Positions 33,384-47,103 of a DNA stretch of 64,000 nucleotides are shown piece by piece (positions within the stretch are counted from its first letter, which is position 1; every line of letters begins with the position of its first letter). The stretch lies in the NCBI GenBank assembly GCA_977020255.1, contig CDROCS010004653.1, forward strand, positions 62,001 to 126,000. The letters are read 5' to 3'. The position numbers were made by a program, and so were the translations under genes. Source of the stretch: Obrimoposthia wandeli. Lineage: Eukaryota. The notes under the pieces were generated by a model. That model did not search any database, was not told the origin of the DNA, and saw only the letters and a list, made by a program, of their open reading frames with translations.

Positions 33384-35741
33384 TTAATCATTAAAAACCA
33401 GTGATGATATAGGTACAGGTTTACCCACACCGTATCCTTGCAGGTAGTTAATACCAATACCCTGACAGGCATTAACTAATGCGTCGTTTTCTACATATTC
33501 TGCTATCGTCTCTATCTGCATGACCTTACCAACCTGGTGAATAGCTTGCACCATCGCCAAGTCGATCGGGTCATCCACCATATCGCGTACAAACGAGCCA
33601 TCTATTTTAAGATAGTTAACAGGGAAGCTTTTTAAATAAGCGAACGATGAAAGGCCACTGCCAAAATCATCAAGAGCAAAGCTACAACCTAGTTCTTTTA
33701 GGCTGTTGATGAGTAATAGAGCTTGCGACATGTTGGCAATAGCCGTGGTCTCGGTTATTTCAAAGCAAACCTGACTTCCCTGCACTATTCCATCTGCAAA
33801 ATGATCAGCCACAAACTGGGAGAATGCTGCATCCCCTAAACATGCACCAGATAGATTGATCGCTACTTTGGGAGTGTGAGCGGCGTTGGTTTTTAGCCAG
33901 CTAAATGTTTGGCTAATAACCCATCGATCAATGTTCGACATGATGCCATATCGCTCCGCTGGTGGGATAAATTCATTTGGATATATTATCTGGTTATTGT
34001 CTGACAATAGGCGGATTAAGATTTCATAGTGGTGTACTTTTAAAGACTCAGCATGCACGATAGGTTGGACATGTAGCTCAAATTGATTCTTATCAATGGC
34101 CTCTGTAATCCTGTTTACCCACTCTAACTCAGCTTCTTTGACAGCGCCTTCCTTTGCCTGAAAAATATGGGTGCGGTTTCGGCCTAAAGCTTTGGCTTCG
34201 TAGCAAGCCATATCGGCCTGATGAATGTAATTTTTAACCGAGTCGCTTTCATGAATGGAGACAAATCCAATAGATATGCCAATACGAAATGATTTCTCTT
34301 GCCAGATAAAGCGAAAACTATCTGCTGTCTCCCTCAGTTTTTCAGCAATTTCTAGTCCTACTTCTGTAGAACAATCGTGGAGTAACACACCAAATTCATC
34401 CCCACCTAAGCGCGCTAACAGGTCAACTTTTCGAATATGTTTCCCAAGGGATAACGCCAATTGCCTTAGTAAATCGTCACCGGCGGCATGCCCACAAGTA
34501 TCATTTACAACTTTGAATTGGTCTAAGTCCATAAATAGAATGATATGAGAAACGGTTTCATTATTGTCACTTGGAATAGCGAGCTGTAATCGGCGTTCAA
34601 ATTCACGCCTGTTAGGTAATCGGGTCAGTGAGTCATGGTTAGCGTTCCAATTCAGCTCCTGAATTAATTGCCTAGAGCTAGTTACATCGTGAAACACGAG
34701 AATTGCACCCAGAACTTTCCCATCAACATCAATGATAGGTGCCGCAGAGCCATTAATCGCTTTCTCATTAGCAAATTTACTGATTAATAAAGATTGATCT
34801 CTACAATGCTGGATAGTCCCAGATGAAACTGCAATTTTGACTAAATCAGGGACTATCTCACCCGTTATTTCATGCAAAACCTTAAACACACTGGAAACTG
34901 GTTGGGCAACGGCATCACTGTTTGTCCAGCCAGTTAATGCCTCAGCCACTGGATTAATAAACTCAACCAAACCAGATTCGTCACAGACAATAACCCCGTC
35001 AATGATCGAATTCAAAGTGATATGTGACTTTTCTTTTTCATTAGTTAATTTTTTATACGAATCCCTGGTATTTTGTTGTAACTGATTAAAGGCCGAGGCG
35101 ACTAGATCTAGTTCATCAGGAAGCGAACCAGGTTTCTTACGGCGGTTGAACGTGAGTAGAGTATTATTAGCTTGAGGCCGAAAGCTTTGAAAACTCTCGA
35201 GTAATCGATATAAATGCCGAGTGACCAGATAATGGAAAAATAAGATGATAAACCCGGCCACCAAGAATGTTTTCAGAGCGTTGGTGGCCAATATTAGGAG
35301 CCCCTTATCAAAGAGCTGTTCGTACACTTCATCGAGGTTACCCAATACTCGAAGCGTACCGATATCTAACAAGTTATTCTGATGCCGATACTCCAATGGG
35401 ATGCTGTGCTCTATAGCGTTGGCATTATCCTGGTTACCCGCTTGCCAGCGAACAGCGTCGTCGACCAATATTGCAAGATATTCTATGCCCTGCAGTTTCA
35501 CCAGGCTTTCGAGCTGTGTTTGTATTTGATCGTGATCGACGACCCAAACACTATTAATGATAACCGGCAGGCTGCTTACTTCAATTTCATGCAGGTTTTT
35601 GTTGATCGCTTGCACGGATTGGCGATAGTCGAAATACAACTGTATCGAGGTAGTTAACAGTGTCAGTAATGTACTAAACAGCACAACACCAAAAATTAGG
35701 CGTTTTGCAATAAAATTATCTTTACGCAGTACCTGCTTCAT
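33384..35741 (-). CDS. Membrane sensor PAS-GGDEF-EAL diguanylate cyclase/phosphodiesterase
   Basis: Two TM segments around a periplasmic domain, HAMP-like DELD, PAS, HDSLTRLPNR, RKVD I-site plus GGDEF, EIL, DDFGSGLSS, KIDGSF, AEYVE. Confidence 0.93.
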   Translation of the reverse strand: MKQVLRKDNFIAKRLIFGVVLFSTLLTLLTTSIQLYFDYRQSVQAINKNLHEIEVSSLPVIINSVWVVDHDQIQTQLESLVKLQGIEYLAILVDDAVRWQAGNQDNANAIEHSIPLEYRHQNNLLDIGTLRVLGNLDEVYEQLFDKGLLILATNALKTFLVAGFIILFFHYLVTRHLYRLLESFQSFRPQANNTLLTFNRRKKPGSLPDELDLVASAFNQLQQNTRDSYKKLTNEKEKSHITLNSIIDGVIVCDESGLVEFINPVAEALTGWTNSDAVAQPVSSVFKVLHEITGEIVPDLVKIAVSSGTIQHCRDQSLLISKFANEKAINGSAAPIIDVDGKVLGAILVFHDVTSSRQLIQELNWNANHDSLTRLPNRREFERRLQLAIPSDNNETVSHIILFMDLDQFKVVNDTCGHAAGDDLLRQLALSLGKHIRKVDLLARLGGDEFGVLLHDCSTEVGLEIAEKLRETADSFRFIWQEKSFRIGISIGFVSIHESDSVKNYIHQADMACYEAKALGRNRTHIFQAKEGAVKEAELEWVNRITEAIDKNQFELHVQPIVHAESLKVHHYEILIRLLSDNNQIIYPNEFIPPAERYGIMSNIDRWVISQTFSWLKTNAAHTPKVAINLSGACLGDAAFSQFVADHFADGIVQGSQVCFEITETTAIANMSQALLLINSLKELGCSFALDDFGSGLSSFAYLKSFPVNYLKIDGSFVRDMVDDPIDLAMVQAIHQVGKVMQIETIAEYVENDALVNACQGIGINYLQGYGVGKPVPISSLVFND

Positions 35742-35825
35742 ATTACCCCTTCCATTACCTAAAATATTTGTAACGATTGGCTATTCAGACAGAAAAAGTA
35801 TGTAACCAATGCAAGTGATAGGTGC

Positions 35826-36560
35826 TTATTCAATTTTAAGGTACTTCATCTGAATTTTCTCATACACACCGTTCATCTTTATCATTTTTAAACCATCTTT
35901 AAATGCGCTTACCAATTCTGCATCTGAACCTTGACTAAAAGCCAGATAAAGTTGATCTGATAATTCATCAAGCCGCAAGACCCGTTCGAACAAAGAAGCA
36001 TCTAATCCTTCTTCTTGTAACATATAAACGAACGATGCTTCTTCGTATCCAATTAAATCAATACGATTATTAGCGAGTAAGCGCAGATTATGCACATGTG
36101 TTGAGACAGTTCTGAGTGAGGTAAAATCATGTCTATGTAAGTAAGCGGCCGTCACATCATTGAGTGACACACCAATCTGATACTTTTTAGCTTCGTCAAT
36201 CGAATTAACTTGAATAGACTTGTTAGCTTTGAGTTTATATAGCGATATTTTATAGGGTGCGATTGCACCTACCCAATCAAATAACGCTTCGCGCTCAGGG
36301 ATTCGAGCGATCGAATAAATCAGGGTGTTTTTATCAGTCTGAGCGATTTCATAGGCACGCGTCCAAGGATAGAATTCGATCGGGGCTTCAAGTTTGATTT
36401 GTTGTAACACTGCCTGAATAACTTCGCTAGATAACCCTTTTGCTTCATCACCCACCTGAAAGTTAAAAGGCGCAAATTCTTCAGTTACAATTCTCAACGA
36501 CTGCGCTTGCAACGAACTCACCATTAATAGCAAGAGGAGTAATACAATATGATTTTTCAT
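35826..36560 (-). CDS. Solo periplasmic substrate-binding protein (family 3, amino-acid type)
   Basis: Signal peptide, VTEEFAPFNF, YPWTRAYE, RIPERE, YLAFS; no transporter genes adjacent. Confidence 0.85.
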   Translation of the reverse strand: MKNHIVLLLLLLMVSSLQAQSLRIVTEEFAPFNFQVGDEAKGLSSEVIQAVLQQIKLEAPIEFYPWTRAYEIAQTDKNTLIYSIARIPEREALFDWVGAIAPYKISLYKLKANKSIQVNSIDEAKKYQIGVSLNDVTAAYLHRHDFTSLRTVSTHVHNLRLLANNRIDLIGYEEASFVYMLQEEGLDASLFERVLRLDELSDQLYLAFSQGSDAELVSAFKDGLKMIKMNGVYEKIQMKYLKIE

Positions 36561-36953
36561 AAAAACAAATATACCTCATGAGCTCCTATTTATCAGCAAG
36601 TGAGTATAACATACAGATAAGAAAAGAAAAGTTGGAGGTAATTTGTCGTTTTTCGAACTCTTTTCAAAGCACTGCATCAACTTTATAATGATCGGTCGCA
36701 CTCTGTTTTTGGCTCAAACCCCGATTAAATCTAACTGACAGCGCTTAGCTTCGTGAACAACTTACTCGGGGAGCTACTCTTAATCTAGCTGATAAATATA
36801 CTTTAGAGTTTGCTGCTAGATTGGGCGACAAAACTACAGCAACTCCACACCAAGTCTACCGATTGTGTACTTTCTATGCGTGTATTACCTCAAGGAGCTT
36901 TTTGCTGATTTTTCTCGCTACTAGTAACTGATTTTCTCTCGTCACTTTCCAAT

Positions 36954-37934
36954 CTAATATGGCGGAAAATCTTCTACGCTATAAGCTTCTTGTTTCAACC
37001 AAGGCTCACGCGTAGTGAGTTGAGGCACTAACTGCTGATCAAAAATTTCACGGCAAATCTGCGTCACTTGTAATGGTAATTCACCAAGCTCTTCACGGCG
37101 CGCCAAGACAAAAATATAGCGTGCGTGGCTTCCAGGCTCTATGGGTAAAATACTCATACCTTCAAGTAGTACTGGGTTTTGCATCAAGCTCATAATAGGC
37201 ACAAACGCCCAGCCCTGCCCGCTTTGTACAAAGCGTAACAGTGTAGAGGTGCTATCTAACTCGTAACGCAACACTTGTTCCACACCGATGCGTCTGGCAA
37301 TTAGCTGAGTTAAGCTGCCCAGGCGCATTTGTCGGTTGTAACTGATGCAAGGTAACTGTGTGGTAACGCCCTTCACTGTGCCATCGGTCTGCGCCAACAG
37401 TTCATTAGCTACGATCAACACAAAAGGATCACGCAATACTGGATATACTTCAAGTTCAGGATGCTGCTGCATTTGATCACTGGTGATCAATATATCAATA
37501 TCACGATTGAGCAAAGCATCTTTTAAAGGTGCCATCATCCCTGTGCGCAAGGATAATTTGCGCGCAGAACTTGCCAAACGCTGCATAGTAAGCTGGCCTG
37601 CTACATCGGCAAAGGAATCTATCATTCCTAAACGTAATTGATCTAGCCCACCACTTGACGCGAGCTGCACGGCAGCCACCATTTGCTGATGCTCACCCAA
37701 TAGCGATTTAGCATAACGCAATAACACTTGCCCACTTAAGGTCAGTTGTGTTGGCCTGGATCGGCGTACCACAAGCGGTACTGCTAATTGCTGCTCAAGT
37801 TGCTTTAAAGATTGGGAAACGGCCGATTGCGTGATTTGCAAACGCTCTGCCGCTTGGGTAATTGTTTCAGCTTCAGCAATGGCAATAAAAGTTTTTAAAG
37901 CCGCTAATTCAGTAAATTTTTCGTTTTTTAACAC
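36954..37934 (-). CDS. LysR-family transcriptional regulator
   Basis: TITQAAERLQITQSAVSQSLKQLE, RPTQLTLSG. Confidence 0.92.
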   Translation of the reverse strand: MLKNEKFTELAALKTFIAIAEAETITQAAERLQITQSAVSQSLKQLEQQLAVPLVVRRSRPTQLTLSGQVLLRYAKSLLGEHQQMVAAVQLASSGGLDQLRLGMIDSFADVAGQLTMQRLASSARKLSLRTGMMAPLKDALLNRDIDILITSDQMQQHPELEVYPVLRDPFVLIVANELLAQTDGTVKGVTTQLPCISYNRQMRLGSLTQLIARRIGVEQVLRYELDSTSTLLRFVQSGQGWAFVPIMSLMQNPVLLEGMSILPIEPGSHARYIFVLARREELGELPLQVTQICREIFDQQLVPQLTTREPWLKQEAYSVEDFPPY

Positions 37935-38043
37935 CTGAACCTACTGCTACTCATTTGAATGAAGGCGATAATAACATGAACTTAGCGAACTATTGCGCTA
38001 ATTTTTACACACAACCCTGATAATAAACCTTACAGCACCAGAC

Positions 38044-38075
38044 AAAAAAAACGCCAGACAGATGCCTAGCGTTTT
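38044..38075 (-). terminator. Rho-independent terminator after the oxidase cluster
   Basis: Minus strand aaaacgctag...ctggcgtttttttt stem followed by a U-tract. Confidence 0.65.
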
Positions 38076-38143
38076 AGTTTGTAGCTTCTAGTGCTTATCT
38101 TTTAACTCGCTTCTCGTAACTCACTACTCGAAACTGCCTTTGT

Positions 38144-39484
38144 CTAGCTCCAAGGAAAAGGGCTATTAGAAGTAGGATGTAGCTTACCTTGTGCAAAACG
38201 TGAGAAACGAAACGGCTCTAACAAGCTTGGTTTTTCGCCAACAATTTGCTCAGCGACTAATTTACCCACGCCCAGCATTTTATAGCCGTGGTTTGAATCA
38301 GCCACTACAAAACAGTTTTTACGGAAGGTATCAAATACCGGGAAGCTATCAGGGGTAAAGCAACCAATGCCGCCAGATGCTTCATCCTTGTACTTTGGAA
38401 TAGTCCCTTCAAAACGCTTTTGACAATGCGCCAATGCGGATACCCACATGTGTGCAAAATCAGGGCCTACGATGAATTCTGGTGATTCAGGTCCGTAAGG
38501 ATCTACTTGTACTTTATCCGCTGGCTTATCAACGATAAACGGAGCAGCACCACCTTGTACACCACCGAAATGATAATCAGGCTTGTAGTAAATGCCCCAC
38601 ATCTCGTCGGTAATTAATGATCCATCAACATCAGAATAAAGAGGCGCGTTACTATCTACGTGGATTACGGGCGGCATTTTGCCATCATTGGTTACTTGCA
38701 GGCCTGGATCTACTCCTAGCGTACCCTCTTGAAGTGACCAGTAAACCCACATTGGCACATCAGTAATGATCTTGCCGTTAGGGTTTTTAACATCAATCTG
38801 CTTGGGTAAATCAAGCATTTCCCAGAACGATTTAACCCAAGGGCCTGCGCCAATTACGACGTAATCAGTTTCTATATCACCTTGGTCTGTTTGTACTTTA
38901 GTGATAGCACCATCCGTTGCTTCAACAAAACCTGTCACGGTAACGCCAGTAATAATGCGCACACCTTCTGCTTCTGCTTTAGCCGCTAAGCCATACATCG
39001 CTTTAGTGTTGTTCGCATAACCACCTGGCATTTCGTGCAGTACTGAAGTAATGCCTTGTGCTTGCCAATCATGAAAAATACCCTTCATATAGTTAGAACA
39101 GTCTTTCTCGCCTTCGATAAACTTAGAATCGTAACCTATCGCTTGCTGCTGCTGATAAATAGATGCCACATCGCAGTGCATTGATTCAGGGCTAATCTGC
39201 ATGTAACCAACAGGGTGATAGCTATAAGCTTGTGGATCGCTCTCCCATACTTTTACACTGTGCGCCATTAGCTCACGCATCGCAGGCTGGAAGTAGTTAT
39301 TGCGAATAACACCACAAGCGATGCCGGTAGCACCTGCTGTTATGCCTGATTTATCGAGGATAATAATATCTTCGCCACTACCTTTTCCGCGCTGTTTTAG
39401 TTCTAGTGCGAGATGGTATGCGGTACTCAATCCATGAATGCCTGCACCGACAATCACATAAGGGGAACTCTTTGGAAACGCCAT
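38144..39484 (-). CDS. FAD-dependent oxidoreductase, N-methylglutamate dehydrogenase subunit A (MgdA)-like second beta subunit
   Basis: IVGAGIHG FAD motif; GIACGVIRNNYFQPAMRELMAHS and DSNHGYKM recalled as MgdA-type (not verified by search). Confidence 0.75.
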   Translation of the reverse strand: MAFPKSSPYVIVGAGIHGLSTAYHLALELKQRGKGSGEDIIILDKSGITAGATGIACGVIRNNYFQPAMRELMAHSVKVWESDPQAYSYHPVGYMQISPESMHCDVASIYQQQQAIGYDSKFIEGEKDCSNYMKGIFHDWQAQGITSVLHEMPGGYANNTKAMYGLAAKAEAEGVRIITGVTVTGFVEATDGAITKVQTDQGDIETDYVVIGAGPWVKSFWEMLDLPKQIDVKNPNGKIITDVPMWVYWSLQEGTLGVDPGLQVTNDGKMPPVIHVDSNAPLYSDVDGSLITDEMWGIYYKPDYHFGGVQGGAAPFIVDKPADKVQVDPYGPESPEFIVGPDFAHMWVSALAHCQKRFEGTIPKYKDEASGGIGCFTPDSFPVFDTFRKNCFVVADSNHGYKMLGVGKLVAEQIVGEKPSLLEPFRFSRFAQGKLHPTSNSPFPWS

Positions 39485-39549
39485 GTTATTATTCCTATTA
39501 TTAGCCGTTCTTACTTGTTTATGTATTGTTTAAATACATGCTTTATCTA

Positions 39550-40308
39550 TTACTGTTCGTTAAAAACCGCCGCTAAACCCACCGGTTTACCGTTAAATTC
39601 CATCATCGCATCACATATACTTTCCCACACAAATGCCACTGAGCTTGAATCACACAACAGATGAAAAGCGGGGGTTGTTGTATTAGTAGCATTAGCTGAA
39701 CTACTCTCATCTGATCCATCAACCGTAAGATCATCACGAATCAATATACCGTTGATTCTGGCGATAGAGGTTTGCGCAATGCTTAAGTTAGCAAACTCGG
39801 TCTCTCGCAGATCAATGCCGCATACTTTTGACAACATCGCGCGCACTTCGCACCCTGTGAGATACAGCCAAGCATGGCTATCGTTGCGCGGCAATGAATA
39901 GCAGGCAACATCGCTTTGCATGCTCCAGCTTTGCGGCAATTTAGTAGGTAATGGTGCGCTTATGGCTAAATCACTTAGTATCAAATGCTCTTGCATTGAA
40001 AGACGCGCGACTAAAGAGCCGTCATCTTGCTTCACTGCTTGGTTAGGGATTTCAGGAATATTCACGCCTTGGTCAGTTAACCACTGTGGTGCTTCACACC
40101 CTTTGAACCCTGATCTTGGCAGCGTCGATAAATCGACCATTGCTAATGATTTAAGCTGCGCGCGTTCTTCATCAAGTTGGGTATTATAATGGCGAACAAC
40201 TATTGAGCCTTGATACTGCGCAAACTGTGCACCTAAGGTTGCTTGTACACTACATAACATACTGCGGCGTAGGTTGCTTTGGGGCGTGGTATTTACGAAT
40301 TCACTCAT
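39550..40308 (-). CDS. soxG: Sarcosine oxidase gamma/MgdD-like subunit
   Basis: DLSTLPRSGFKG, MLSKVCGIDLR, AQTSIARI; position after the alpha subunit. Confidence 0.8.
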   Translation of the reverse strand: MSEFVNTTPQSNLRRSMLCSVQATLGAQFAQYQGSIVVRHYNTQLDEERAQLKSLAMVDLSTLPRSGFKGCEAPQWLTDQGVNIPEIPNQAVKQDDGSLVARLSMQEHLILSDLAISAPLPTKLPQSWSMQSDVACYSLPRNDSHAWLYLTGCEVRAMLSKVCGIDLRETEFANLSIAQTSIARINGILIRDDLTVDGSDESSSANATNTTTPAFHLLCDSSSVAFVWESICDAMMEFNGKPVGLAAVFNEQ

Positions 40309-40375
40309 GACTTTTCCTCAGCATCTCTACCTATATTTATCGCAGTTTCTCTCGACATGTTAATCGTCATGTTAC

Positions 40376-43327
40376 TCATAGCGTCTGCCTTTGTGTTTGA
40401 GGATCGTAAAATGGCAGCGCAACAACTTTGGCATTCACCATTACACCACCTGTAGATCTAATCGCTATTTCACTGCCAACTTCAGCTTTGTGCAGTTGTA
40501 CATAAGCCATACCTACCGGCTTGCCTAAAGTAGGCGAATAGTTACAAGAAGTTATTCTTCCGGTCATTTGATCACCTTCAATAATCAAGTGGCTCTCTAA
40601 TGGAATAGGTGCGTCTAGATCATCAACCACAAAGCCAACTAAGGCTCGTAATTGGCCGATAGTATTCAGCTCTTTTATAACGCGCTGACCAACAAAGAAA
40701 GGTTTCTTAGTTGATACCGCCCAACCCATTTGTACTTCTTGTGGAGTCGACATGGCATCGGTATCTTGGCCGATAATGATATGGCCTTTTTCTAAACGCA
40801 GCACACGCTGTGCCTCGATACCAAATGGTTTGATACCTTGCTCAACACCTGCTTCTATTAAGGCATCCCACAGTGCTTCACCACAATGCTGTGGTACATG
40901 GATTTCAAAACCGAGTTCGCCCACAAAACCGACACGAATTAAGCGTGCTTCAACACCAGCAACATGTCCTTCACGCACACCCATATAAGGGAACGCTTCA
41001 CTGCTAAGGTCAACATCGCTACATACTTTTTCCAGTACTTCGCGCGCTTTTGGCCCGGCGATATTTACGGCGCACCAAGCAGAAGTGACATTGGCGATAT
41101 CAACATCTAAGCACCACTGAGCATTCCATTTGAGCATGCTTTGATAAACGCGATCTACACCGCCAGTGGTGGCGGTTACATAAAATAATTGATCGTGAAA
41201 ACGACAGCTCACACCATCGTCAATTACTACACCGGCCTCGTTAGTCATCAATGCATAACGTGCACGGCCAATGGGTTGCTTTAAAAAGCCGAAGGTGTAA
41301 ATACGGTTCATTAATTCAGCTGCATCTGGGCCGCGAATTTCAATGCCACCTAAGGTAGATACATCCACTAAACCCACATTATTACGCACGTTATCAACTT
41401 CTGCATTGATACACGCATCACGCTGCTCGGTTGTGCCATAGTAAGCTGGGCGATACCAAGCACCTGCTTGTAGCATTTGTGCACCGGCCTCTAAATGTCG
41501 CTGATGCATGCTAGTAAAGCGCTCAGGATAAAAACTGCGACCTGCTAAATGCCCTAAACGCTCTGGAGCAAAAGGTGGGCGCGCGGTGGTAACACCTGTT
41601 TGTGCAACGCTTCTGCCGGTCGCCTCTGCAACAATACGCGCAGTAGCTAATGCAGAATGACGCCCTTGTGATGGCCCCATACCACATGTGGAATAGCGCT
41701 TAACTAGCTGTATGTGTTCATAACCATCGCGGGTAGCGTTAACGATATCGGCTATTTGTAAATCTTCATCAAAATCGACAAACTCTTTGCCTTTTGGATG
41801 TGGAAAAATAGGCCAGCTATAATTGGGGCTAGCAGCACTATCATCAGCTAACGGTGCAGGCTCTGCTATGGCGCTAATATGATCGTTATCTTGTGCGAGT
41901 CGATTGCAGGCTAATACAGCCGTACGATAACCATCACCACACACCGCATCTGTTGACCAATTACCATTCACTGAACCAGCTATTTGCAGCGCTTTAGGGA
42001 GTTTTTCTAAGGTAAATAGTGCCGTTTCATCATCGTAGCTTAACTGCCCACCCGCTTGGCAAACCAGCTGATACGTTGGCGTGTAACCTATTGCCATACA
42101 TAGCAAATCACAATCAACAAACTCACCGCTATCTGCACATTTACCACGCCCAATTTGCTTGCGTAGCTCAACTCCCGCCAAATGCTTTTTATCGCTGTTA
42201 GCTTTTGCGGCATACACTGCATGGTTGTTGTATATAGGGACTCCGCGGCCAGCTAGTTCTTGCACAATATCGCTTTGTACTGGCGCATCACGTAGCTCTG
42301 CAACGGCGGCTACTTCAATACCGGCATCTAGCATTTCAAGTGCAACTGCGTATCCGTGATCATTACCCGTCACAACGACAGCGCGTTTGCCTGGGCGCAC
42401 CCCGTAAAGCCTAATCAAGCGTGCTATCGCACTAGACATCATCACGCCGGGTAGGTCATTGTTATGAAAAACAGCTTGCTGCTCTAATGAACCCACCGCC
42501 ATAATCAATTCTTTAGCGCGTACTTTGTACATCCTTGCGCCTTGAATTATCGGCAGCCAGTTATCAGCAAAGTAGCCGTTACATAATGCATCGAGCTTTA
42601 CTTCAATATTATCATTCGCTTCGATATCAGCGATCATAGCCAGGCGTAATGCCTGTGCATTATGACCTTGTGCATCAATTCTGTCGTAGCTTAAGCTGCC
42701 ACCTAATACTGGGTTTTCATCCACCAGTAAAACCTTAGCACCTTGCTCTGCCGCTTGAATCGCAGCCGTCATTCCCGCAGGGCCTGCACCAACGACTACC
42801 AAATCATAAAAGCGGTAAGCTTTGTCGTAGTAACCCGGCTTAAAGTTTTCATCAAGCACGCCTAAACCGGCTTTTTTACGAATCAATGGTGCCCATTTTT
42901 CCCAAGCGCCTTTTGGTTTATAAAAAGCTTTGTAGTAAAAACCGACCGGCATAAAACCGCCCACTTTTTCAATATGACGCCCTAAATCTTTTTCTAAGCT
43001 ACCGCTATAATTTTGCCCATCAACATTCATGCCCTGCACTAGCGGGGTTTTATCGGCTAGCACGTTAGGATCACTTGGCAGCTGTACTAAACTGTTAGCA
43101 TCTTGCCCTGCCATGGTTAATACACCACGTGGGCGATGATATTTAAAAGAGCGGCTAATCAGCCACTGGCCACTGGCTGCCAAGGCACTGGCGATAGAAT
43201 CCCCAGCAAAGCCTTGAAATTGCTTATTGGCAAAAGAGAAATTCAATGTTTGGCTGCGATCTATCAGTAAACCGCCACTGGCCAATCTATTGTTTGCGCC
43301 GTTTGTACTATTATGAGTTATAGCCAT
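40376..43327 (-). CDS. soxA: Sarcosine oxidase alpha/MgdC-like subunit (FAD/NAD domain plus GcvT-like folate domain)
   Basis: SRSFKYHRPRG, VVGAGPAG, KRYSTCGMGPSQG, DVSTLGGIE, RLEKGH. Confidence 0.9.
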   Translation of the reverse strand: MAITHNSTNGANNRLASGGLLIDRSQTLNFSFANKQFQGFAGDSIASALAASGQWLISRSFKYHRPRGVLTMAGQDANSLVQLPSDPNVLADKTPLVQGMNVDGQNYSGSLEKDLGRHIEKVGGFMPVGFYYKAFYKPKGAWEKWAPLIRKKAGLGVLDENFKPGYYDKAYRFYDLVVVGAGPAGMTAAIQAAEQGAKVLLVDENPVLGGSLSYDRIDAQGHNAQALRLAMIADIEANDNIEVKLDALCNGYFADNWLPIIQGARMYKVRAKELIMAVGSLEQQAVFHNNDLPGVMMSSAIARLIRLYGVRPGKRAVVVTGNDHGYAVALEMLDAGIEVAAVAELRDAPVQSDIVQELAGRGVPIYNNHAVYAAKANSDKKHLAGVELRKQIGRGKCADSGEFVDCDLLCMAIGYTPTYQLVCQAGGQLSYDDETALFTLEKLPKALQIAGSVNGNWSTDAVCGDGYRTAVLACNRLAQDNDHISAIAEPAPLADDSAASPNYSWPIFPHPKGKEFVDFDEDLQIADIVNATRDGYEHIQLVKRYSTCGMGPSQGRHSALATARIVAEATGRSVAQTGVTTARPPFAPERLGHLAGRSFYPERFTSMHQRHLEAGAQMLQAGAWYRPAYYGTTEQRDACINAEVDNVRNNVGLVDVSTLGGIEIRGPDAAELMNRIYTFGFLKQPIGRARYALMTNEAGVVIDDGVSCRFHDQLFYVTATTGGVDRVYQSMLKWNAQWCLDVDIANVTSAWCAVNIAGPKAREVLEKVCSDVDLSSEAFPYMGVREGHVAGVEARLIRVGFVGELGFEIHVPQHCGEALWDALIEAGVEQGIKPFGIEAQRVLRLEKGHIIIGQDTDAMSTPQEVQMGWAVSTKKPFFVGQRVIKELNTIGQLRALVGFVVDDLDAPIPLESHLIIEGDQMTGRITSCNYSPTLGKPVGMAYVQLHKAEVGSEIAIRSTGGVMVNAKVVALPFYDPQTQRQTL

Positions 43328-43623
43328 TAGCTTTCTCCTGCGTCAACGGTGAAATCAACGCGCTTGTTAAATATTTTACTGGCGGGGAAAGTTTCAATAA
43401 TTTCATCCGTGATGGTATTACGACGTGCCATAAACCAATAAGAAGTCGCGCTGTGGCACCACCACTCACACACTTCACCTGCGATGTTGTCATGGAAAAA
43501 CACATGTTCAACCCACTCGCGTGTATCGCACTTTTGCGGATCTGGCATGGGGTGATACTCACCGCCATAAATGAATTCTGATATGTTGCGCAGCCCATTC
43601 AACGGGCAATTAATTTGTTTCAT
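43327..43623 (-). CDS. soxD: Sarcosine oxidase delta/MgdB-like subunit
   Basis: INCPLNGLRNISEFIYGGE, EWWCHSATSYWF, RNTITDEI. Confidence 0.9.
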   Translation of the reverse strand: MKQINCPLNGLRNISEFIYGGEYHPMPDPQKCDTREWVEHVFFHDNIAGEVCEWWCHSATSYWFMARRNTITDEIIETFPASKIFNKRVDFTVDAGES

Positions 43624-43644
43624 TGCAGTTTCTCGCTGTAGAGG

Positions 43645-44889
43645 TTAATGGCTAGCGGCAGTAGCACCGGCTTCGTTGATTTGATCAAAGCGGTAAAAAC
43701 GCTCTAACTCAAACGGCTTAATCAAAGCAGGTGGCTTACCGGTGGCGACTAACTCAGCCATCGACTTACCACTGATCGGCGTAGCTTTGAACCCCCAAGT
43801 CCCCCAACCAGCATCTAAATAGTAATTTTCAACTGGGCTTAGACCCATAATTGGGCTGTAATCCGGTGTCATATCTGTGACCCCTGCCCACTGGCGCATC
43901 AAACGCGCTTGCGCTAAAAACGGGAATAGTTCTAACGTTGCAGCGGCTAATGACTCTTTCATATCTAGAGTAGAGCGGGTGTTATAAAGCGGATATGGAT
44001 CAGAGCCTCCACCGATAACAAACTCACCACGTGAGGTTTGGTGTACATAAACATGCACATGCGGCGAGCTAACATGGGGCGTTAACATCGGCTTATAAGG
44101 CTGGGTCACCATCGCCTGTAGCGGAAAGCTGTGTATCGGTAATTTAATACCGGCCATTTTCGCCACCACCGAACTAGTACCAGCCACCGCCTGCACTGCA
44201 CAACCACAAGAAATAGTGCCGCGCGAGGTTTTAATCCCCTTCAGCTTACCGTTCTCAACTAACACATCTTGCACTTCTGTGAGCTGGTGCAATTCAACAC
44301 CACGATCACAAGCCCCTTTCATATAACCCCAAGCGACTGCATCGTGGCGCGCTGTCGCACCATCTGCATGCCAAAGCCCACCCATAATTGGATAGCGCCC
44401 ATCTTCAGGCATATTTAAATTTGGTACTAACTCACGAATCGTTTGACGATCCACCAGCTCTGAGCGTACACCCAAGTGCTGATTCACTTCCGCGCGCCAA
44501 CGAAAACTGCGCACCGCTGCATCGCTGTGAGCTAAAGTCAATTGACCGCGGTTTTCCATCATCACGTTGTAACCAAACTCGTTACTCAAGTTCTGATAAA
44601 GCTCCACTGATTCGCGATAAAAACTAACACCTTGATCAGTTAAATAGTTAGATCGGATAACCGCGGTATTACGCGCCGTATTTCCGCCGCCCAAATAACC
44701 TTTATCTAATACTGCAACATTGGTAATACCGTGGTATTTAGCGAGGTAATAAGCAATAGCAGCTCCATGGCCACCCGCGCCGATAATCACTACATCATAG
44801 TGTTTTTTCAGTTCAGTATTACTGGGGGTAAAGTGCTGCTGAGCCGGATAATCTTTGCTCAAACCATATTTCAATAAGCCGAAAGGCAT
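43645..44889 (-). CDS. soxB: Sarcosine oxidase beta-like FAD subunit
   Basis: YDVVIIGAGGHG, AKYHGITNVAVL, GGGNTARNTAVIRSNY, ARHDAVAWGY, GWGTWGFKATP. Confidence 0.88.
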   Translation of the reverse strand: MPFGLLKYGLSKDYPAQQHFTPSNTELKKHYDVVIIGAGGHGAAIAYYLAKYHGITNVAVLDKGYLGGGNTARNTAVIRSNYLTDQGVSFYRESVELYQNLSNEFGYNVMMENRGQLTLAHSDAAVRSFRWRAEVNQHLGVRSELVDRQTIRELVPNLNMPEDGRYPIMGGLWHADGATARHDAVAWGYMKGACDRGVELHQLTEVQDVLVENGKLKGIKTSRGTISCGCAVQAVAGTSSVVAKMAGIKLPIHSFPLQAMVTQPYKPMLTPHVSSPHVHVYVHQTSRGEFVIGGGSDPYPLYNTRSTLDMKESLAAATLELFPFLAQARLMRQWAGVTDMTPDYSPIMGLSPVENYYLDAGWGTWGFKATPISGKSMAELVATGKPPALIKPFELERFYRFDQINEAGATAASH

Positions 44890-45438
44890 GGTGTTCTCCC
44901 ACCTTTAAATTTAAAAATTTACCCTTTAAAAGCGATGAAAACCTACCTTTAGCTAAACATCAGCAAAGCATATGGATTACACCATTTAACAAACTTCTAT
45001 AAAAGGACAGCCAAGACAAACTTCCTTGGCAAGATGACAACAATATCGCCAATTAAACGCGCGCTTGCAACTATCTACAGCCATTATTAGCAACTCTAAT
45101 AATGGTATAAAGCACGGCTTATTTAGGCGTTGATTTGGGATACTTTAGTTAGCCTGCAAGTTGCAGAAGGTGACGATCTGATACAGCTAAAATGCCTGAG
45201 ATTTTACAAGACAAAAAATTGCGTAATTTCTGGAAATAGTACGTTCATTTGATAGGAAGTGTTTTTTTGTAAAATAGATATTACCTCAGCAAGTTAAGTA
45301 AAGGGTGATCCTCAAAGCAACAAAGAGGAGAATATCTATCGCTGTAAAATTTTGTGACTTACTGAAAACTCAAGGGCTGCATTAAGGGCCCTTGAACCGA
45401 TAGAACGCCCACGTAATTCGTGCGACGCACAAAAACCT

Positions 45439-47103
45439 CTATAGAATTATTTTTCCTATTTGCTCTATGTATTGATGAATCATCGCCATAAATTTACCCG
45501 CGTCTGCACCATTAATCACACGGTGATCAAATGACAAACACAGCGGCAGTTTTTTGCGTGGTTTAAAGCTTTCACCATCCCAAACAGGCCTGATTTCAGC
45601 ACTAGCGACGCCTAAAATTGCGACTTCTGGGCCATTCACTATCGGTGTAAATCCAGTGCCACCCATGGGTCCTAAGCTAGAGACCGTAAAGCAACCTCCT
45701 GTCATTGCATCGACACCCAACTTTCTGTTTTTTGCTTTCACTGCCAAATCGTTAATCTGTAAGCTAAGCTCACTGATTGATAATGTATCGGCATTGCGTA
45801 TAACAGGAACTAATAGCCCAGCAGGAGTGTCGACTGCCACCCCTATATTTACATATTTTTTATAAATGACTTGCTGCCCATTAGAATCTAACGAACTATT
45901 AAACTTAGGGTATTTACGTAAAGCTTTGGCAACGATCATCACTATAAATGGCAGAATTGTCGGCTTTCTTTCTAGCTTAAATTCCGCTGGATCAATACTG
46001 CTGCGAAAAGCTTCTAGTTCAGTAATATCAACTTCATCGTGCAAGGTGACGTGCGGAATGTTCAGCCAACAGCGTGTCATGTGAGCAGCCGTCGCTTTAG
46101 CGATCGCCGACATATCATGCCTTTCTATTTCACCAAACTGACTAAAATCTATACTTGGTAGAGGAGTAATAGCCTGAGAAGTACTAAAATTGACCTCTTT
46201 TTTTGCATGGCCGTTGAGCATTTGACGTTTCACAAAGGATTTTACATCTTCTTTTAAAACCCGGCCACGATAGGCGCTACCGACAACAAGAGACAAATCA
46301 ACTGCCATTTCTCTTGCCAGTTTACGCACCGCAGGGCCCGCCGATGAGCGTCGCTCGAAAATCACCGCATCATTTTCAGTCGCTTCACTCACTTGCGTAT
46401 CACTTACTTCACTTTGGCTATCGGCTGGTAATACTATCGGCTTTATGGCAGAGCCTTGGTTCCCAGTAACGAGCTGATACTCATCAACAGCAGCTGTTTG
46501 TGGCTCACTGATAACACTAACTACCGCTAATTGATTGCCTTGCGAGACGCTGTCACCAATGCCAACTAACCATTTTTTTAGTATTCCGTTGCTAGTTGTC
46601 ACTATATCCATAGCGGCTTTGTCTGATTCTACTACCAAGATTGCCGTACCTTCTACTAATTCATCACCAACCGCCACTGAATACTCAACCACCTCACCCT
46701 CGCCTTCGGCATCTAAACTGATAATAACGTCCCTAGTAATTACAGGACTGCTATTTGTCGGCACCAATTTATTGTCTGCATAGCTAATATCCGTGGTAAC
46801 TTCGACATCCGCTTGCTGATCTGATAGTAATGTGCCGATTGGCGACTGCGATTTCGGCTCTTGCTCTGATTTTGCTGCAGACACTGATGCTAACTCAGCC
46901 TCTTGGGATATATTATCTCCAATATCAACAAGCCACTTTGTCACCACCCCACTCATTGTCGCGGGAATTTCCATCGTCGCCTTGTCGGATTCAACTACCA
47001 ACAGAGAGTCACCTTCGTTAACGGTATCGCCGATCGCTACACAATATTCAACAACCTCTCCTTCACCTTCGGCCTCTAGCTTAATTATTTTTTCACTGTT
47101 CAT
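45439..47103 (-). CDS. aceF: Dihydrolipoyllysine acetyltransferase E2 with two lipoyl domains
   Basis: ESDKATME and ESDKAAMD lipoyl motifs, AGPAVRKLARE E1/E3-binding domain, SFDHRVINGA catalytic motif. Confidence 0.93.
   Translation of the reverse strand: MNSEKIIKLEAEGEGEVVEYCVAIGDTVNEGDSLLVVESDKATMEIPATMSGVVTKWLVDIGDNISQEAELASVSAAKSEQEPKSQSPIGTLLSDQQADVEVTTDISYADNKLVPTNSSPVITRDVIISLDAEGEGEVVEYSVAVGDELVEGTAILVVESDKAAMDIVTTSNGILKKWLVGIGDSVSQGNQLAVVSVISEPQTAAVDEYQLVTGNQGSAIKPIVLPADSQSEVSDTQVSEATENDAVIFERRSSAGPAVRKLAREMAVDLSLVVGSAYRGRVLKEDVKSFVKRQMLNGHAKKEVNFSTSQAITPLPSIDFSQFGEIERHDMSAIAKATAAHMTRCWLNIPHVTLHDEVDITELEAFRSSIDPAEFKLERKPTILPFIVMIVAKALRKYPKFNSSLDSNGQQVIYKKYVNIGVAVDTPAGLLVPVIRNADTLSISELSLQINDLAVKAKNRKLGVDAMTGGCFTVSSLGPMGGTGFTPIVNGPEVAILGVASAEIRPVWDGESFKPRKKLPLCLSFDHRVINGADAGKFMAMIHQYIEQIGKIIL

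What the first reader, a model, noticed from the sequence alone, without database searches (positions are those of the whole stretch)
38144..44889. Heterotetrameric sarcosine-oxidase/MGD-like cluster with two different beta (FAD) subunits around one delta-alpha-gamma set
Seen: order beta1-delta-alpha-gamma-beta2, followed by a terminator and a LysR; the two betas are very divergent (414 and 446 aa). Established: soxBDAG and mgdABCD each carry a single catalytic beta. Beta2 has motifs I recall from MgdA, and alpha has an MgdC-like SRSFKYHRPRGVLTMAGQDAN, both unverified. Inference: swappable catalytic subunits on a shared electron-transfer/folate scaffold, oxidising two different N-methyl or N-alkyl amino acids, or an alpha-beta-beta' complex.
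Basis: partly seen in the sequence, partly recalled or inferred. Interest (0 to 1): 0.7.

Follow-up and report, generated by a model that had tools for sequence, protein, structure and literature searches.

The report
Sox-like tetramer operon plus stand-alone flavoenzyme
The five genes are real and probably co-transcribed, but the "second beta" is most likely a separate enzyme of a very conserved, uncharacterised marine family (the SAR11_1304 "monomeric sarcosine oxidase" family) that works beside a divergent sarcosine-oxidase-like complex in methylated-amine breakdown, not a swappable subunit.

Summary
Observation confirmed. On the minus strand lie beta1 (414 aa), delta, alpha (983 aa), gamma, beta2 (446 aa), one strong terminator, then a LysR gene.

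The "two betas on one scaffold" reading is not supported.
- beta1-delta-alpha-gamma is a divergent Sox/Mgd-like lineage ("clade W"). It scores below NCBIfam cut-offs. Its delta lacks two canonical zinc ligands.
- beta2 is a distant SoxB-fold flavoprotein. It keeps two residues that, by my recollection, are SoxB's substrate Arg and catalytic Lys. It has Asn in place of the covalent-FMN His.
- The beta2 family stays 68-87% identical across phyla. By matching gene order it includes SAR11_1304, which is induced under nitrogen limitation and has no known function.
- About 35 of 80 species loci place beta2 first in a GS-like/GOGAT-like operon ("operon A"). About 16-20 place it beside a Sox-like tetramer of either lineage, at either end. 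About 11 place it near Rieske oxygenase genes.
- Copies 97% identical to the window's sit on two other contigs of this assembly, with no tetramer genes in the 8.4-8.7 kb read upstream.

Best reading: two enzymes of one pathway, probably successive N-demethylations. The substrates are unknown.

By-product: among TMAO-demethylase genomes, operon A and DmmA-like dimethylamine monooxygenase genes almost exclude each other.

The parts
43645..44889 (-). beta1: SoxB-type FAD subunit of the heterotetramer (clade W)
   Evidence: Full DAO domain. TIGR01373 soxB 475.8 bits, below the 529 cut-off. 382 bits to PDB 2gag_B. It has a His (H182, in TARHD) aligned to 2gag_B His173; that this His carries the covalent FMN is from my memory of the TSOX literature.
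43327..43623 (-). delta: SoxD-family small subunit with an atypical metal site
   Evidence: PF04267 90.8 bits; TIGR01374 63 bits, below the 116.5 cut-off. Reads CPLNG and EWWCH-ATS where S-type deltas read CPxCG and H..GC. This is shared by all 13 clade-W deltas aligned.
40376..43327 (-). alpha: SoxA-type large subunit with a folate-binding (GcvT-like) C-terminal half
   Evidence: Fer2_4, Pyr_redox_2, SO_alpha_A3, GCV_T and GCV_T_C domains. TIGR01372 888 bits, below the 1164 cut-off. The quoted motif is at residues 58-78.
39550..40308 (-). gamma: divergent SoxG-position subunit (252 aa)
   Evidence: Weak GCV_T match only, 28.5 bits; no SoxG family match was listed. Found at the same position, 36-40% identical, in clade-W loci L001, L006, L015, L023 and L048.
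38144..39484 (-). beta2: stand-alone SoxB-fold FAD oxidoreductase of the SAR11_1304-like family
   Evidence: DAO N-terminal half only; soxB 76 bits. AF2 model pLDDT 86.4; best fold matches are TSOX beta chains (TM 0.78, about 20% identity). Asn159 sits at the SoxB His173 position; R61 and K402 are conserved. At least 8000 relatives, 68-87% identical across phyla. The ortholog in a SAR11-like genome sits at the SAR11_1304 position.
38048..38075 (-). intrinsic terminator closing the five-gene unit
   Evidence: 12-bp stem, 4-nt loop, T run. It is the strongest terminator-like site in 36800-45500.
36954..37934 (-). LysR-family regulator, probably tied to beta2
   Evidence: HTH_1 plus LysR_substrate domains. 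Homologs 41-63% identical follow beta2 in L001, L015, L023 and L048. One lies divergent from a tetramer-less beta2 in L009.
44890..45438 (-). 549-nt upstream intergenic region, presumed promoter/operator of the operon
   Evidence: Only one weak sigma-70-like match, at 45111-45083. This is inferred, not shown.

Best explanation
The operon encodes two separate enzymes of one methylated-amine catabolic route, under a LysR regulator.

(1) A four-subunit (beta1, delta, alpha, gamma), folate-linked enzyme of the sarcosine-oxidase / N-methylglutamate-dehydrogenase type. It belongs to a divergent lineage I call clade W. It would oxidise an N-methyl amino acid and pass the C1 unit to tetrahydrofolate on alpha.

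(2) beta2, a soluble FAD enzyme with the SoxB fold. It belongs to the highly conserved SAR11_1304-like family and works without the alpha/gamma/delta scaffold.

Most likely the two carry out successive oxidative N-demethylations of the same amino-acid skeleton. beta2 would convert the tertiary (N,N-dimethyl) form to the secondary (N-methyl) form. The tetramer would convert the secondary form to the free amino acid. This parallels dimethylglycine dehydrogenase followed by sarcosine oxidase.

My best guess for the skeleton is glutamate (N,N-dimethylglutamate to N-methylglutamate to glutamate). Glycine (dimethylglycine to sarcosine) is the alternative.

Shown: gene content, family placement, residue conservation, synteny and co-occurrence statistics. 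Inferred: independence of beta2 from alpha, the order of the steps, and the substrates.
For: beta2 differs from a tetramer beta:
- soxB 76 bits against the 529 cut-off. Asn159 (nearly invariant in GGYANN) sits at the SoxB His173 position, whereas beta1 keeps that His.
- It keeps R61 (IRNNY) and K402 (HGYK), aligned to SoxB Arg69/70 and Lys358/359. I recall these as the substrate-carboxylate and catalytic residues, which would point to an N-alkyl amino acid substrate.

beta2 behaves as a mobile single-gene unit:
- In 80 species loci it heads a GS-like/GATase/GXGXG/FMN-GltS/p143 operon in about 35.
- It is next to a tetramer in about 16-20. Positions vary: after gamma, before beta, or divergent.
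- It is near Rieske oxygenase genes in about 11, and near MttB/GMC/aminotransferase genes in 5.
- Copies 97% identical lie on contigs C6212 and C6364 of the same assembly. No tetramer genes occur in the 8.4-8.7 kb read upstream. One copy lies downstream of an OpuA-type importer and a CN_hydrolase gene.
- In complete genomes G004 and G411, beta2 lies 1.4 Mb and 0.58 Mb from the clade-W alpha.

No co-divergence with the scaffold:
- beta2 is 68-76% identical to the window's copy beside S-type tetramers and 69-87% beside clade W.
- The cognate subunits differ far more between the two lineages: alpha about 35%, beta about 42-46%.

Functional coupling is nevertheless strong:
- The same five-gene order occurs in L006, L015, L023 and L048 (the last three with LysR following), in L001 with a 4-kb insert, and with S-type tetramers in L064 and L072.
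- beta2-first order occurs in L049, L054, L066 and L074 and, by coordinates, in G223 and G378.
- In a 401-genome gammaproteobacterial sample, all 26 beta2 genomes have a SoxA-type alpha (50 of 401 overall; Fisher p = 2e-27).
- 16 of 19 clade-W genomes have beta2.

The folate-binding domains of alpha are intact.
Against: - No biochemical or expression data exist for this locus or for any member of either family.
- The closest relatives of beta2 with solved structures (TSOX beta, P. horikoshii PDH beta) are all obligate partners of alpha-type subunits.
- beta2 never occurred without some SoxA-type alpha in a genome that was reasonably complete. A complex is therefore not excluded.
- The high conservation of beta2 across contexts implies one substrate. 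It is hard to name one that fits operon A, both tetramer lineages and the Rieske/MttB contexts.
- N,N-dimethylglutamate is, to my knowledge, not an established natural metabolite.
- SAR11_1304 is induced by nitrogen limitation while the adjacent operon-A proteins are not (PMC3870248).
- Six operon-A genomes had no beta2.
Confidence: 0.6

Rival explanations
1. One reading: beta2 is a second catalytic beta that docks on the same alpha/gamma/delta scaffold. That would give an alpha-beta2 (or alpha-beta-beta') complex with a different substrate.
For: - The best sequence and fold matches of beta2 are TSOX beta and P. horikoshii PDH beta. Both function only with alpha-type partners.
- It is probably co-transcribed with alpha.
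- Co-occurrence with SoxA-type alpha at genome level: 26 of 26 Gammaproteobacteria, and 19 of the 20 other beta2 genomes checked.
- The five-gene layout arose repeatedly.
Against: - Asn replaces the covalent-FMN His. The GxGxxG motif starts at residue 13, against residue 37 in beta1, so the SoxB-type N-terminal arm is absent.
- Most loci have no delta/alpha/gamma within 10 kb.
- 97%-identical copies sit in other contexts in the same assembly.
- beta2 stays about 70% identical beside alphas that are only 35% identical to each other.
- In G004 and G411 it lies 0.6-1.4 Mb from alpha.
Confidence: 0.1
2. beta2 is a redundant oxidase for the same substrate as the tetramer (sarcosine or N-methylglutamate). 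It would be used, for example, for nitrogen scavenging at low substrate levels, releasing free formaldehyde instead of methylene-THF.
For: [quoted passage not shown]
- The SoxB-like Arg and Lys are conserved.
- It heads the operon-A cluster, whose product would be an N-alkylglutamate.
Against: - TIGR01377 (the model named soxA_mon) gives only 41 bits against a 479 cut-off.
- Redundancy does not explain repeated, independent recruitment next to tetramers, or the very strong purifying selection.
Confidence: 0.15
3. beta2 oxidises a small secondary amine directly, such as dimethylamine to methylamine plus formaldehyde. This was speculated for SAR11_1304 by Lidbury et al. 2017.
For: - Tdm (TMAO demethylase, which produces dimethylamine) lies immediately upstream of beta2 in the SAR11-like locus L086 and in G412. 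The 785-aa family that includes the G412 Tdm lies within 7 kb of beta2 in about 6 of 80 loci.
- SAR11 lacks dmmDABC (PMC5520151).
Against: - The conserved Arg aligned to SoxB's carboxylate-binding Arg suggests an amino-acid substrate.
- The window, M. jannaschii (G008) and the type-II genomes tested show no operon-A genes, and no Tdm was found in G008, G142, G223, G345, G371 or G378. Methylamine would have no onward route there.
- Exclusion with the DmmA-like gene is sharper for operon A than for beta2.
Confidence: 0.1
4. beta2 is a redox partner of the GOGAT-like proteins of operon A, passing electrons from its FAD to their FMN. Its presence here would be a remnant or a secondary use.
For: - It is the first gene of operon A in about 35 of 80 loci, and even in a 41%-identical relative.
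- By my recollection, SoxB-type betas normally pass electrons to an FMN at a subunit interface.
Against: - No operon-A genes were found in the window. Neither the GS-like gene nor the p143 gene was found in G008, G223, G371 or G378, and the GS-like gene was also not found in G142 or G345.
- beta2 is unlinked from operon A in several genomes.
Confidence: 0.05

Closest known systems
Heterotetrameric sarcosine oxidase SoxBDAG (TSOX; Stenotrophomonas maltophilia 2GAG, Corynebacterium sp. U-96 1VRQ/3AD7)
   Same: - Gene order beta-delta-alpha-gamma.
- beta1 gives 382 bits to 2gag_B and keeps the His aligned to His173.
- alpha has the full domain set, including the GcvT-like folate domains.
   Different: - All three scoreable subunits fall below NCBIfam cut-offs.
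- delta lacks the Cys9 and Cys63 equivalents.
- gamma is long and matches no SoxG model.
- There is no glyA or purU flank as in the canonical operons (PMC3691474).
- A fifth gene, beta2, and a LysR gene follow.
N-methylglutamate dehydrogenase MgdABCD (Methyloversatilis universalis, Methylocella silvestris, Ruegeria pomeroyi SPO1585-1588, Cobetia sp. OBi1)
   Same: - Same four-subunit architecture.
- It can occur as a stand-alone operon in marine Gammaproteobacteria that receive N-methylglutamate from homarine (PMC13236597).
- Clade W often lies beside a paralog of the gmaS-mgsABC genes.
   Different: - Tetramers next to canonical gmaS/mgsABC-type genes (L019, L087) are S-type. Their alphas are 34-36% identical to the window's. 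The L019 beta is about 40% identical to beta1 and scores 662 bits on soxB, above the cut-off.
- No characterised Mgd sequence was available to me, so the placement of clade W relative to true Mgd is untested.
SAR11_1304, 'monomeric sarcosine oxidase' of Ca. Pelagibacter ubique HTCC1062
   Same: - In a 1.3-Mb, low-GC alphaproteobacterial genome, a 61%-identical ortholog of beta2 sits in the order Tdm, beta2, GS-like, GATase, GXGXG, FMN-GltS, p143, Amt, then a second, more distant GATase-GXGXG pair.
- This matches the published order SAR11_1303 to 1316 (PMC3160333, PMC3870248).
   Different: - In SAR11 it is not adjacent to a tetramer, and no clade-W alpha was found.
- Its function is unknown. 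It is the second most induced protein under nitrogen limitation.
- The identity with SAR11_1304 is inferred from gene order, not from the published sequence.
Dimethylglycine oxidase / dehydrogenase (Arthrobacter DMGO 1PJ5, mammalian DMGDH)
   Same: - Same flavoprotein fold (Foldseek E about 1e-23).
- It has the proposed role: the tertiary-to-secondary amine demethylation that precedes a sarcosine-oxidase-type step.
   Different: - beta2 has no fused folate (GcvT) domain.
- By my reading of the alignment against motifs I recall, it has no His for covalent FAD; the flavin-site loop resembles SoxB.
- About 18-20% identity only.
Beta subunit of the L-proline dehydrogenase complex of Pyrococcus horikoshii (PDB 1Y56_B)
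   Same: - Best PDB sequence hit of beta2 (E = 3.5e-12), and among the best fold hits.
- It also has no His at the SoxB FMN position.
   Different: - 1Y56_B works in a complex with an alpha subunit.
- beta2 is about 65-70 residues longer, with extra strands in the substrate domain.
- About 21% identity.

Membership tests
Heterotetrameric sarcosine oxidase family (beta1-delta-alpha-gamma) | Four genes in the order beta-delta-alpha-gamma | tested here: met
Heterotetrameric sarcosine oxidase family (beta1-delta-alpha-gamma) | beta has a histidine that carries covalent FMN (His173 in 2GAG numbering; role recalled from the literature) | tested here: met
   beta1 H182 aligns to 2gag_B H173.
Heterotetrameric sarcosine oxidase family (beta1-delta-alpha-gamma) | alpha has a dinucleotide-binding half and a GcvT-like folate-binding half | tested here: met
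   Fer2_4, Pyr_redox_2, SO_alpha_A3, GCV_T (249 bits) and GCV_T_C.
Heterotetrameric sarcosine oxidase family (beta1-delta-alpha-gamma) | delta has a Cys3His zinc site (Cys6, Cys9, His59, Cys63; recalled from the 2GAG paper) | tested here: not met
   CPLNG replaces CPxCG, and there is no GC after the His. This holds for all 13 clade-W deltas. S-type deltas such as L049, L066 and L074 keep CxxC...H..GC.
Heterotetrameric sarcosine oxidase family (beta1-delta-alpha-gamma) | Scores above the curated NCBIfam cut-offs (TIGR01373, TIGR01374, TIGR01372) | tested here: not met
   475.8 against 529; 63 against 116.5; 888 against 1164. All nine S-type betas tested score 570-719.
Heterotetrameric sarcosine oxidase family (beta1-delta-alpha-gamma) | Sarcosine as substrate | not testable with these tools
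   No glyA or purU was noted beside the cluster.
N-methylglutamate dehydrogenase MgdABCD | Linked to gmaS and mgsABC, or shown to be needed for growth on N-methylglutamate | tested here: inconclusive
   No gmaS/mgs-like gene was found in the window. Nothing closer than 41% over part of the GS-like query was found in the whole mixed assembly. In other genomes clade W is often linked to the paralogous operon A.
TSOX beta subunit (for beta2) | soxB family score, covalent-FMN His, and a gene directly before delta | tested here: not met
   76 bits against 529. Asn159 replaces the His. The gene follows gamma.
Monomeric sarcosine oxidase, MSOX (for beta2) | Score on TIGR01377, the NCBIfam model named soxA_mon | tested here: not met
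   41.3 bits against a cut-off of 479.65. About 16% identity in the fold alignment.
SAR11_1304-like flavoprotein family (for beta2) | Full-length orthology (over 55% identity, about 446 aa) and the conserved position ahead of GS-like/GATase/GXGXG/FMN-GltS/p143 | tested here: met
   61% identity to the ortholog in the SAR11-like locus L086, with the matching gene order. The operon-A position itself is not present in the window.

The most novel reading that the evidence does not exclude
The beta2 family, operon A (GS-like ligase, split GOGAT-like trio and a 140-aa protein) and Sox/Mgd-like tetramers together form an undescribed glutamate-mediated route for dimethylamine.
- It would replace dimethylamine monooxygenase in SAR11 and many other marine and soil bacteria.
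- The route would run: dimethylamine, gamma-glutamyl-dimethylamide, N,N-dimethylglutamate, then N-methylglutamate (by beta2), then glutamate (by the tetramer).
- The window would carry only the two lower steps.
- If true, this would remove the proposed "dimethylamine bottleneck" of the marine methylated-amine cycle and assign a function to SAR11_1304.
Probability: 0.2. Interest if true: 0.8.

Novelty: new variant of a known kind. Interest (0 to 1): 0.5.

Why it matters
Methylated amines and betaines are major marine nitrogen and C1 sources.

Two things here have no described function. One is a divergent lineage of sarcosine-oxidase-like tetramers. The other is a flavoprotein family that stays 68-87% identical from Gammaproteobacteria to Acidobacteriota.
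- The flavoprotein was found in about 6-11% of sampled proteobacterial species.
- Its SAR11 member is one of the proteins most induced under nitrogen limitation.

The two are repeatedly placed in one operon. That gives a concrete, testable hypothesis of successive demethylation. It also offers cultured organisms, such as Marinobacterium jannaschii DSM 6295, in which to test it.

The near-exclusive pattern of operon A against DmmA-like dimethylamine monooxygenase genes bears on an open question: how SAR11 and other Dmm-less bacteria dispose of dimethylamine.

Tried and rejected
1. Rejected on context: the tetramers next to canonical gmaS/mgsABC-type genes are S-type. Where the beta was in hand (L019) it scores 662 bits on soxB, while beta2 scores 76.

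2. beta2 needs either clade W or operon A. This held for 26 of 26 Gammaproteobacteria. It failed in Alphaproteobacteria: G006, G009 and G010 had neither.

3. The Rieske genes near beta2 as true GbcA. Only the L060 protein is GbcA-like (526 bits against a 670 cut-off). The others give about 105-114 bits.

4. The 140-aa operon-A protein (p143) as a partner of beta2. It was not found in four type-II genomes, and no family matched it.

5. Absence claims from the window's own genome. G000 is a 1.35-Gb, 6912-contig mixed assembly, so only contig-level statements are safe.

6. RNA evidence for co-transcription. No RNA run holds the locus.

7. Distant relatives P0124 and P0127. Their contigs were too short to be informative. 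P0131 has the same operon-A context, but its sequence looks degraded.

8. Literature searches for a described five-gene layout, for SAR11_1304 follow-up work, or for dimethylglutamate. Nothing beyond the papers cited was found.

9. Placement of clade W against experimentally verified Mgd sequences.

Full report
**What is in the window**

Six co-directional genes lie on the minus strand:
- beta1, 44889..43645
- delta, 43623..43327
- alpha, 43327..40376
- gamma, 40308..39550
- beta2, 39484..38144
- a LysR-family gene, 37934..36954

Gaps between genes are at most 67 nt. The only strong terminator-like hairpin is at 38075-38048, directly after beta2.

Family scans:
- beta1: full DAO domain; soxB 475.8 bits (cut-off 529).
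- delta: SoxD; 63 bits (cut-off 116.5).
- alpha: Fer2_4, Pyr_redox_2, SO_alpha_A3, GCV_T and GCV_T_C; soxA 888 bits (cut-off 1164).
- gamma: a weak GCV_T match only.
- beta2: the DAO profile matches residues 9-230 only; soxB 76 bits.

The upstream genes are aceE- and aceF-like and belong to another module. Downstream of LysR lie a solute-binding-protein gene and a CHASE5-PAS-GGDEF-EAL gene.

**The tetramer is a divergent lineage ("clade W")**

- beta1 gives 382 bits to S. maltophilia SoxB. It has a His aligned to His173 of that chain (H182). I recall that residue as the covalent-FMN site.
- All nine beta subunits I tested from other Sox-like tetramers ("S-type") score 570-719 bits on soxB. One of them (L019) lies beside canonical gmaS/mgsABC-type genes. 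Clade-W betas (window, L001, L043) score 474-498.
- Window alpha is 50-67% identical to clade-W alphas, but 32-39% to S-type alphas.
- All 13 clade-W deltas read CPLNG...EWWCH. They lack two of the four canonical zinc ligands that S-type deltas keep.
- No characterised Mgd sequence was available by reference. I cannot say whether clade W equals the published Mgd clade.
- The tetramers next to canonical gmaS/mgsABC-type genes in L019 and L087 are S-type.

**What beta2 is**

- The two betas share only two short local alignments.
- The best PDB sequence hits of beta2 are P. horikoshii PDH beta and TSOX beta, at E = 1e-11 to 1e-12, over the N-terminal half.
- An AF2 model (pLDDT 86.4) matches TSOX beta best (E = 7e-26, TM 0.78, about 20% identity). 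DMGO, DMGDH, L-amino-acid deaminase and MSOX follow closely.
- In a 20-sequence family alignment, R61 (IRNNY) and K402 (HGYK) are nearly invariant and invariant respectively. They align to SoxB Arg69/70 and Lys358/359, which I recall as the substrate-carboxylate and catalytic residues.
- The His173 position is a nearly invariant Asn.
- The GxGxxG motif starts at residue 13, so the N-terminal arm seen in SoxB and beta1 is missing.
- beta2 is thus a SoxB-related amine-oxidising flavoprotein without the diflavin hallmark.

**A tight, widespread family**

- The word search returned at least 8000 relatives. The top 120 clusters are 76-85% identical.
- The genome scan found at least 599 species loci. 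The best 80 are 68-87% identical. They span Gamma- and Alphaproteobacteria, Acidobacteriota, Latescibacterota, Gemmatimonadota, Vulcanimicrobiota and a Bacteroidota MAG.
- In the exhaustive representative search, essentially one 50%-identity cluster holds the family. A few 41-45% outliers exist.
- It is single-copy in 26 of 401 sampled Gammaproteobacteria and present in 44 of 401 Alphaproteobacteria.

**Genomic contexts (80 loci)**

(A) About 35 loci have a divergent GntR gene, then beta2, a GS-like ligase (about 490 aa; TIGR03105 309 bits against a 469 cut-off), a GATase, a GXGXG protein, an FMN-GltS protein and a 140-aa protein. An Amt gene often follows. I call this "operon A". It is a paralog of gmaS-mgsABC. 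The same arrangement is kept by a 41%-identical relative.

(B) About 16-20 loci have a Sox-like tetramer beside beta2.
- Clade W followed directly by beta2, as in the window: L006, L015, L023 and L048, with LysR following in the last three. L001 has the same order, and LysR, with a 4-kb insert.
- S-type tetramer followed by beta2: L064, L072.
- beta2 first: L049, L054, L066 and L074; also G223 and G378 by coordinates.
- Divergent orientation: L018, L019, L041, L050.

(C) About 11 loci have a Rieske oxygenase gene, only distantly GbcA-like, with a GcvA-type regulator.

(D) Five loci have MttB-family, GMC oxidoreductase, aminotransferase and GbdR-like genes.

A CN_hydrolase gene with an OpuA-type importer recurs (L082, L089).

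**Link to SAR11_1304**

A 1.3-Mb alphaproteobacterial genome (G804; local GC 33%) carries this order:
- Tdm (1084 bits on the TMAO demethylase model)
- a beta2 ortholog (61% identical)
- the GS-like, GATase, GXGXG, FMN-GltS and p143 genes
- Amt
- a second, more distant GATase-GXGXG pair

 This matches the published order SAR11_1303 (GcvT-like), 1304 ("monomeric sarcosine oxidase"), 1305 glnT, 1308 gltB2, 1310 amt and 1313-1316 glxBCD-glnT (PMC3160333, PMC3870248).
- SAR11_1304 was the second most induced protein under nitrogen limitation, and its function "remains uncertain" (PMC3870248).
- Lidbury et al. noted it as a possible, unconfirmed dimethylamine oxidase in a clade that lacks dmmDABC (PMC5520151).
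- I found no later characterisation.

**Is beta2 a subunit or a separate enzyme?**

For a complex:
- Its nearest structural relatives are partners of alpha-type subunits.
- All 26 beta2-positive Gammaproteobacteria carry a SoxA-type alpha, against 50 of 401 overall (p = 2e-27).
- 16 of 19 clade-W genomes carry beta2.
- Nineteen of the 20 other beta2 genomes checked also have an alpha.

Against a complex:
- The FMN histidine and the N-terminal arm are missing.
- Most loci have no delta-alpha-gamma nearby.
- In complete genomes G004 and G411, beta2 is 1.4 Mb and 0.58 Mb from alpha.
- beta2 remains 68-76% identical to the window's copy beside S-type tetramers. Their alpha (about 35%) and own beta (about 42-46%) are far more diverged. 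Context labels are scattered over a beta2 tree that broadly follows taxonomy.
- Copies 97% identical to the window's beta2 lie on contigs C6212 and C6364 of the same assembly. No tetramer genes occur in the 8.4-8.7 kb read upstream. A clade-W tetramer on C5599 has no beta2 in the 2.5 kb read downstream.
- The LysR gene travels with beta2, as in L009.

I conclude that beta2 is a separate enzyme, functionally coupled to Sox-like tetramers. My confidence in this whole reading is about 0.6, and about 0.1 for the scaffold model.

**Mechanism proposed**

- The tetramer removes an N-methyl group and hands the C1 unit to folate on alpha. This is inferred from intact domains.
- beta2 has no folate module but keeps the SoxB-like Arg and Lys. 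It most plausibly performs the preceding tertiary-to-secondary demethylation of the same amino acid. This is inference.
- Clade W and beta2 are both tied to operon A. Glutamate is therefore my first guess for the skeleton, and glycine the alternative.
- The window itself has no operon-A genes. M. jannaschii (G008) has neither the GS-like nor the p143 gene, and no Tdm. There the substrate would have to come from outside or from another pathway. N-methylglutamate from homarine is one possible source (PMC13236597).

**By-product: operon A against Dmm**

Among Tdm-carrying genomes, the operon-A GS-like gene and a DmmA-like gene (PF11927) almost exclude each other.

| Sample | Both | Operon A only | DmmA-like only | Neither |
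|---|---|---|---|---|
| Alphaproteobacteria | 1 | 23 | 6 | 3 |
| Gammaproteobacteria and others | 0 | 13 | 3 | 0 |

- The pooled Fisher p is 1e-6. It is not corrected for phylogeny or MAG incompleteness.
- Tdm is often adjacent to operon A.
- This supports operon A as an alternative dimethylamine route, but does not prove it. It underlies the novel case.

**Limits**

- No expression or biochemical data exist.
- G000 is a 1.35-Gb mixed assembly, so absence in "own" is weak evidence.
- PF11927 is a family, not a DmmA equivalog.
- The identity with SAR11_1304 rests on gene order.
- Residue roles in SoxB are from my recollection of the TSOX structural literature.
- One DNA run labelled ice metagenome holds part of the locus, which suggests a cold marine host.

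Noticed in passing
L081:10001-16600, L085:8001-15388, L086:9463-17500 (other genomes; not in the window): A conserved operon in many phyla: beta2-family flavoprotein, a 490-aa GS-like ligase, GATase, GXGXG protein, FMN-GltS protein and a 140-aa protein with no family match. An Amt gene is often next to it. Its proteins are 62-79% identical between a Rhodospirillaceae isolate and a SAR11-like genome. It is a paralog of gmaS-mgsABC with no described function.
   Followed up: partly
genomes G007-G806: Among 49 genomes with TMAO demethylase, the operon-A GS-like gene and a DmmA-like (PF11927) gene are nearly mutually exclusive. Counts: 36 with operon A only, 9 with DmmA-like only, 1 with both, 3 with neither. 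Tdm is often adjacent to operon A.
   Followed up: partly
window 43327-43623; deltas in L001, L006, L015, L018, L023, L024, L037, L043, L047, L048, L076, L080: Clade-W delta subunits read CPLNG...EWWCH. They lack two canonical SoxD zinc ligands. A third delta type, in L019 and L054, has no Cys at either motif (HPLLG...HEQGD).
   Followed up: partly
G000:C6212:21721-23058 and G000:C6364:11392-12729 (L088, L089); G000:C5599:98562-103500 (L090): The same assembly holds two more beta2 genes, 97% identical to the window's. No tetramer genes lie in the 8.4-8.7 kb read upstream of either. One lies downstream of an OpuA-type ABC importer and a CN_hydrolase gene. A second clade-W tetramer (beta 72% identical) has no beta2 in the 2.5 kb read downstream. 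Related strains or paralogs.
   Followed up: partly
window 33384-36560: A CHASE5-PAS-GGDEF-EAL signalling protein (785 aa) and a family-3 solute-binding protein lie just downstream of the LysR gene. A GGDEF gene was also noted beside the Colwellia glyA-soxBDAG-purU cassette (PMC3691474).
   Followed up: no
P0131 / L085:8001-9365: This 41%-identical beta2 relative has a degenerate dinucleotide-binding motif and many odd substitutions, yet keeps the operon-A position. It may be a decaying gene or carry long-read assembly errors.
   Followed up: no
window 37900-43800: A public run labelled ice metagenome holds about 18% of the sampled words of this stretch. No RNA run holds it.
   Followed up: no
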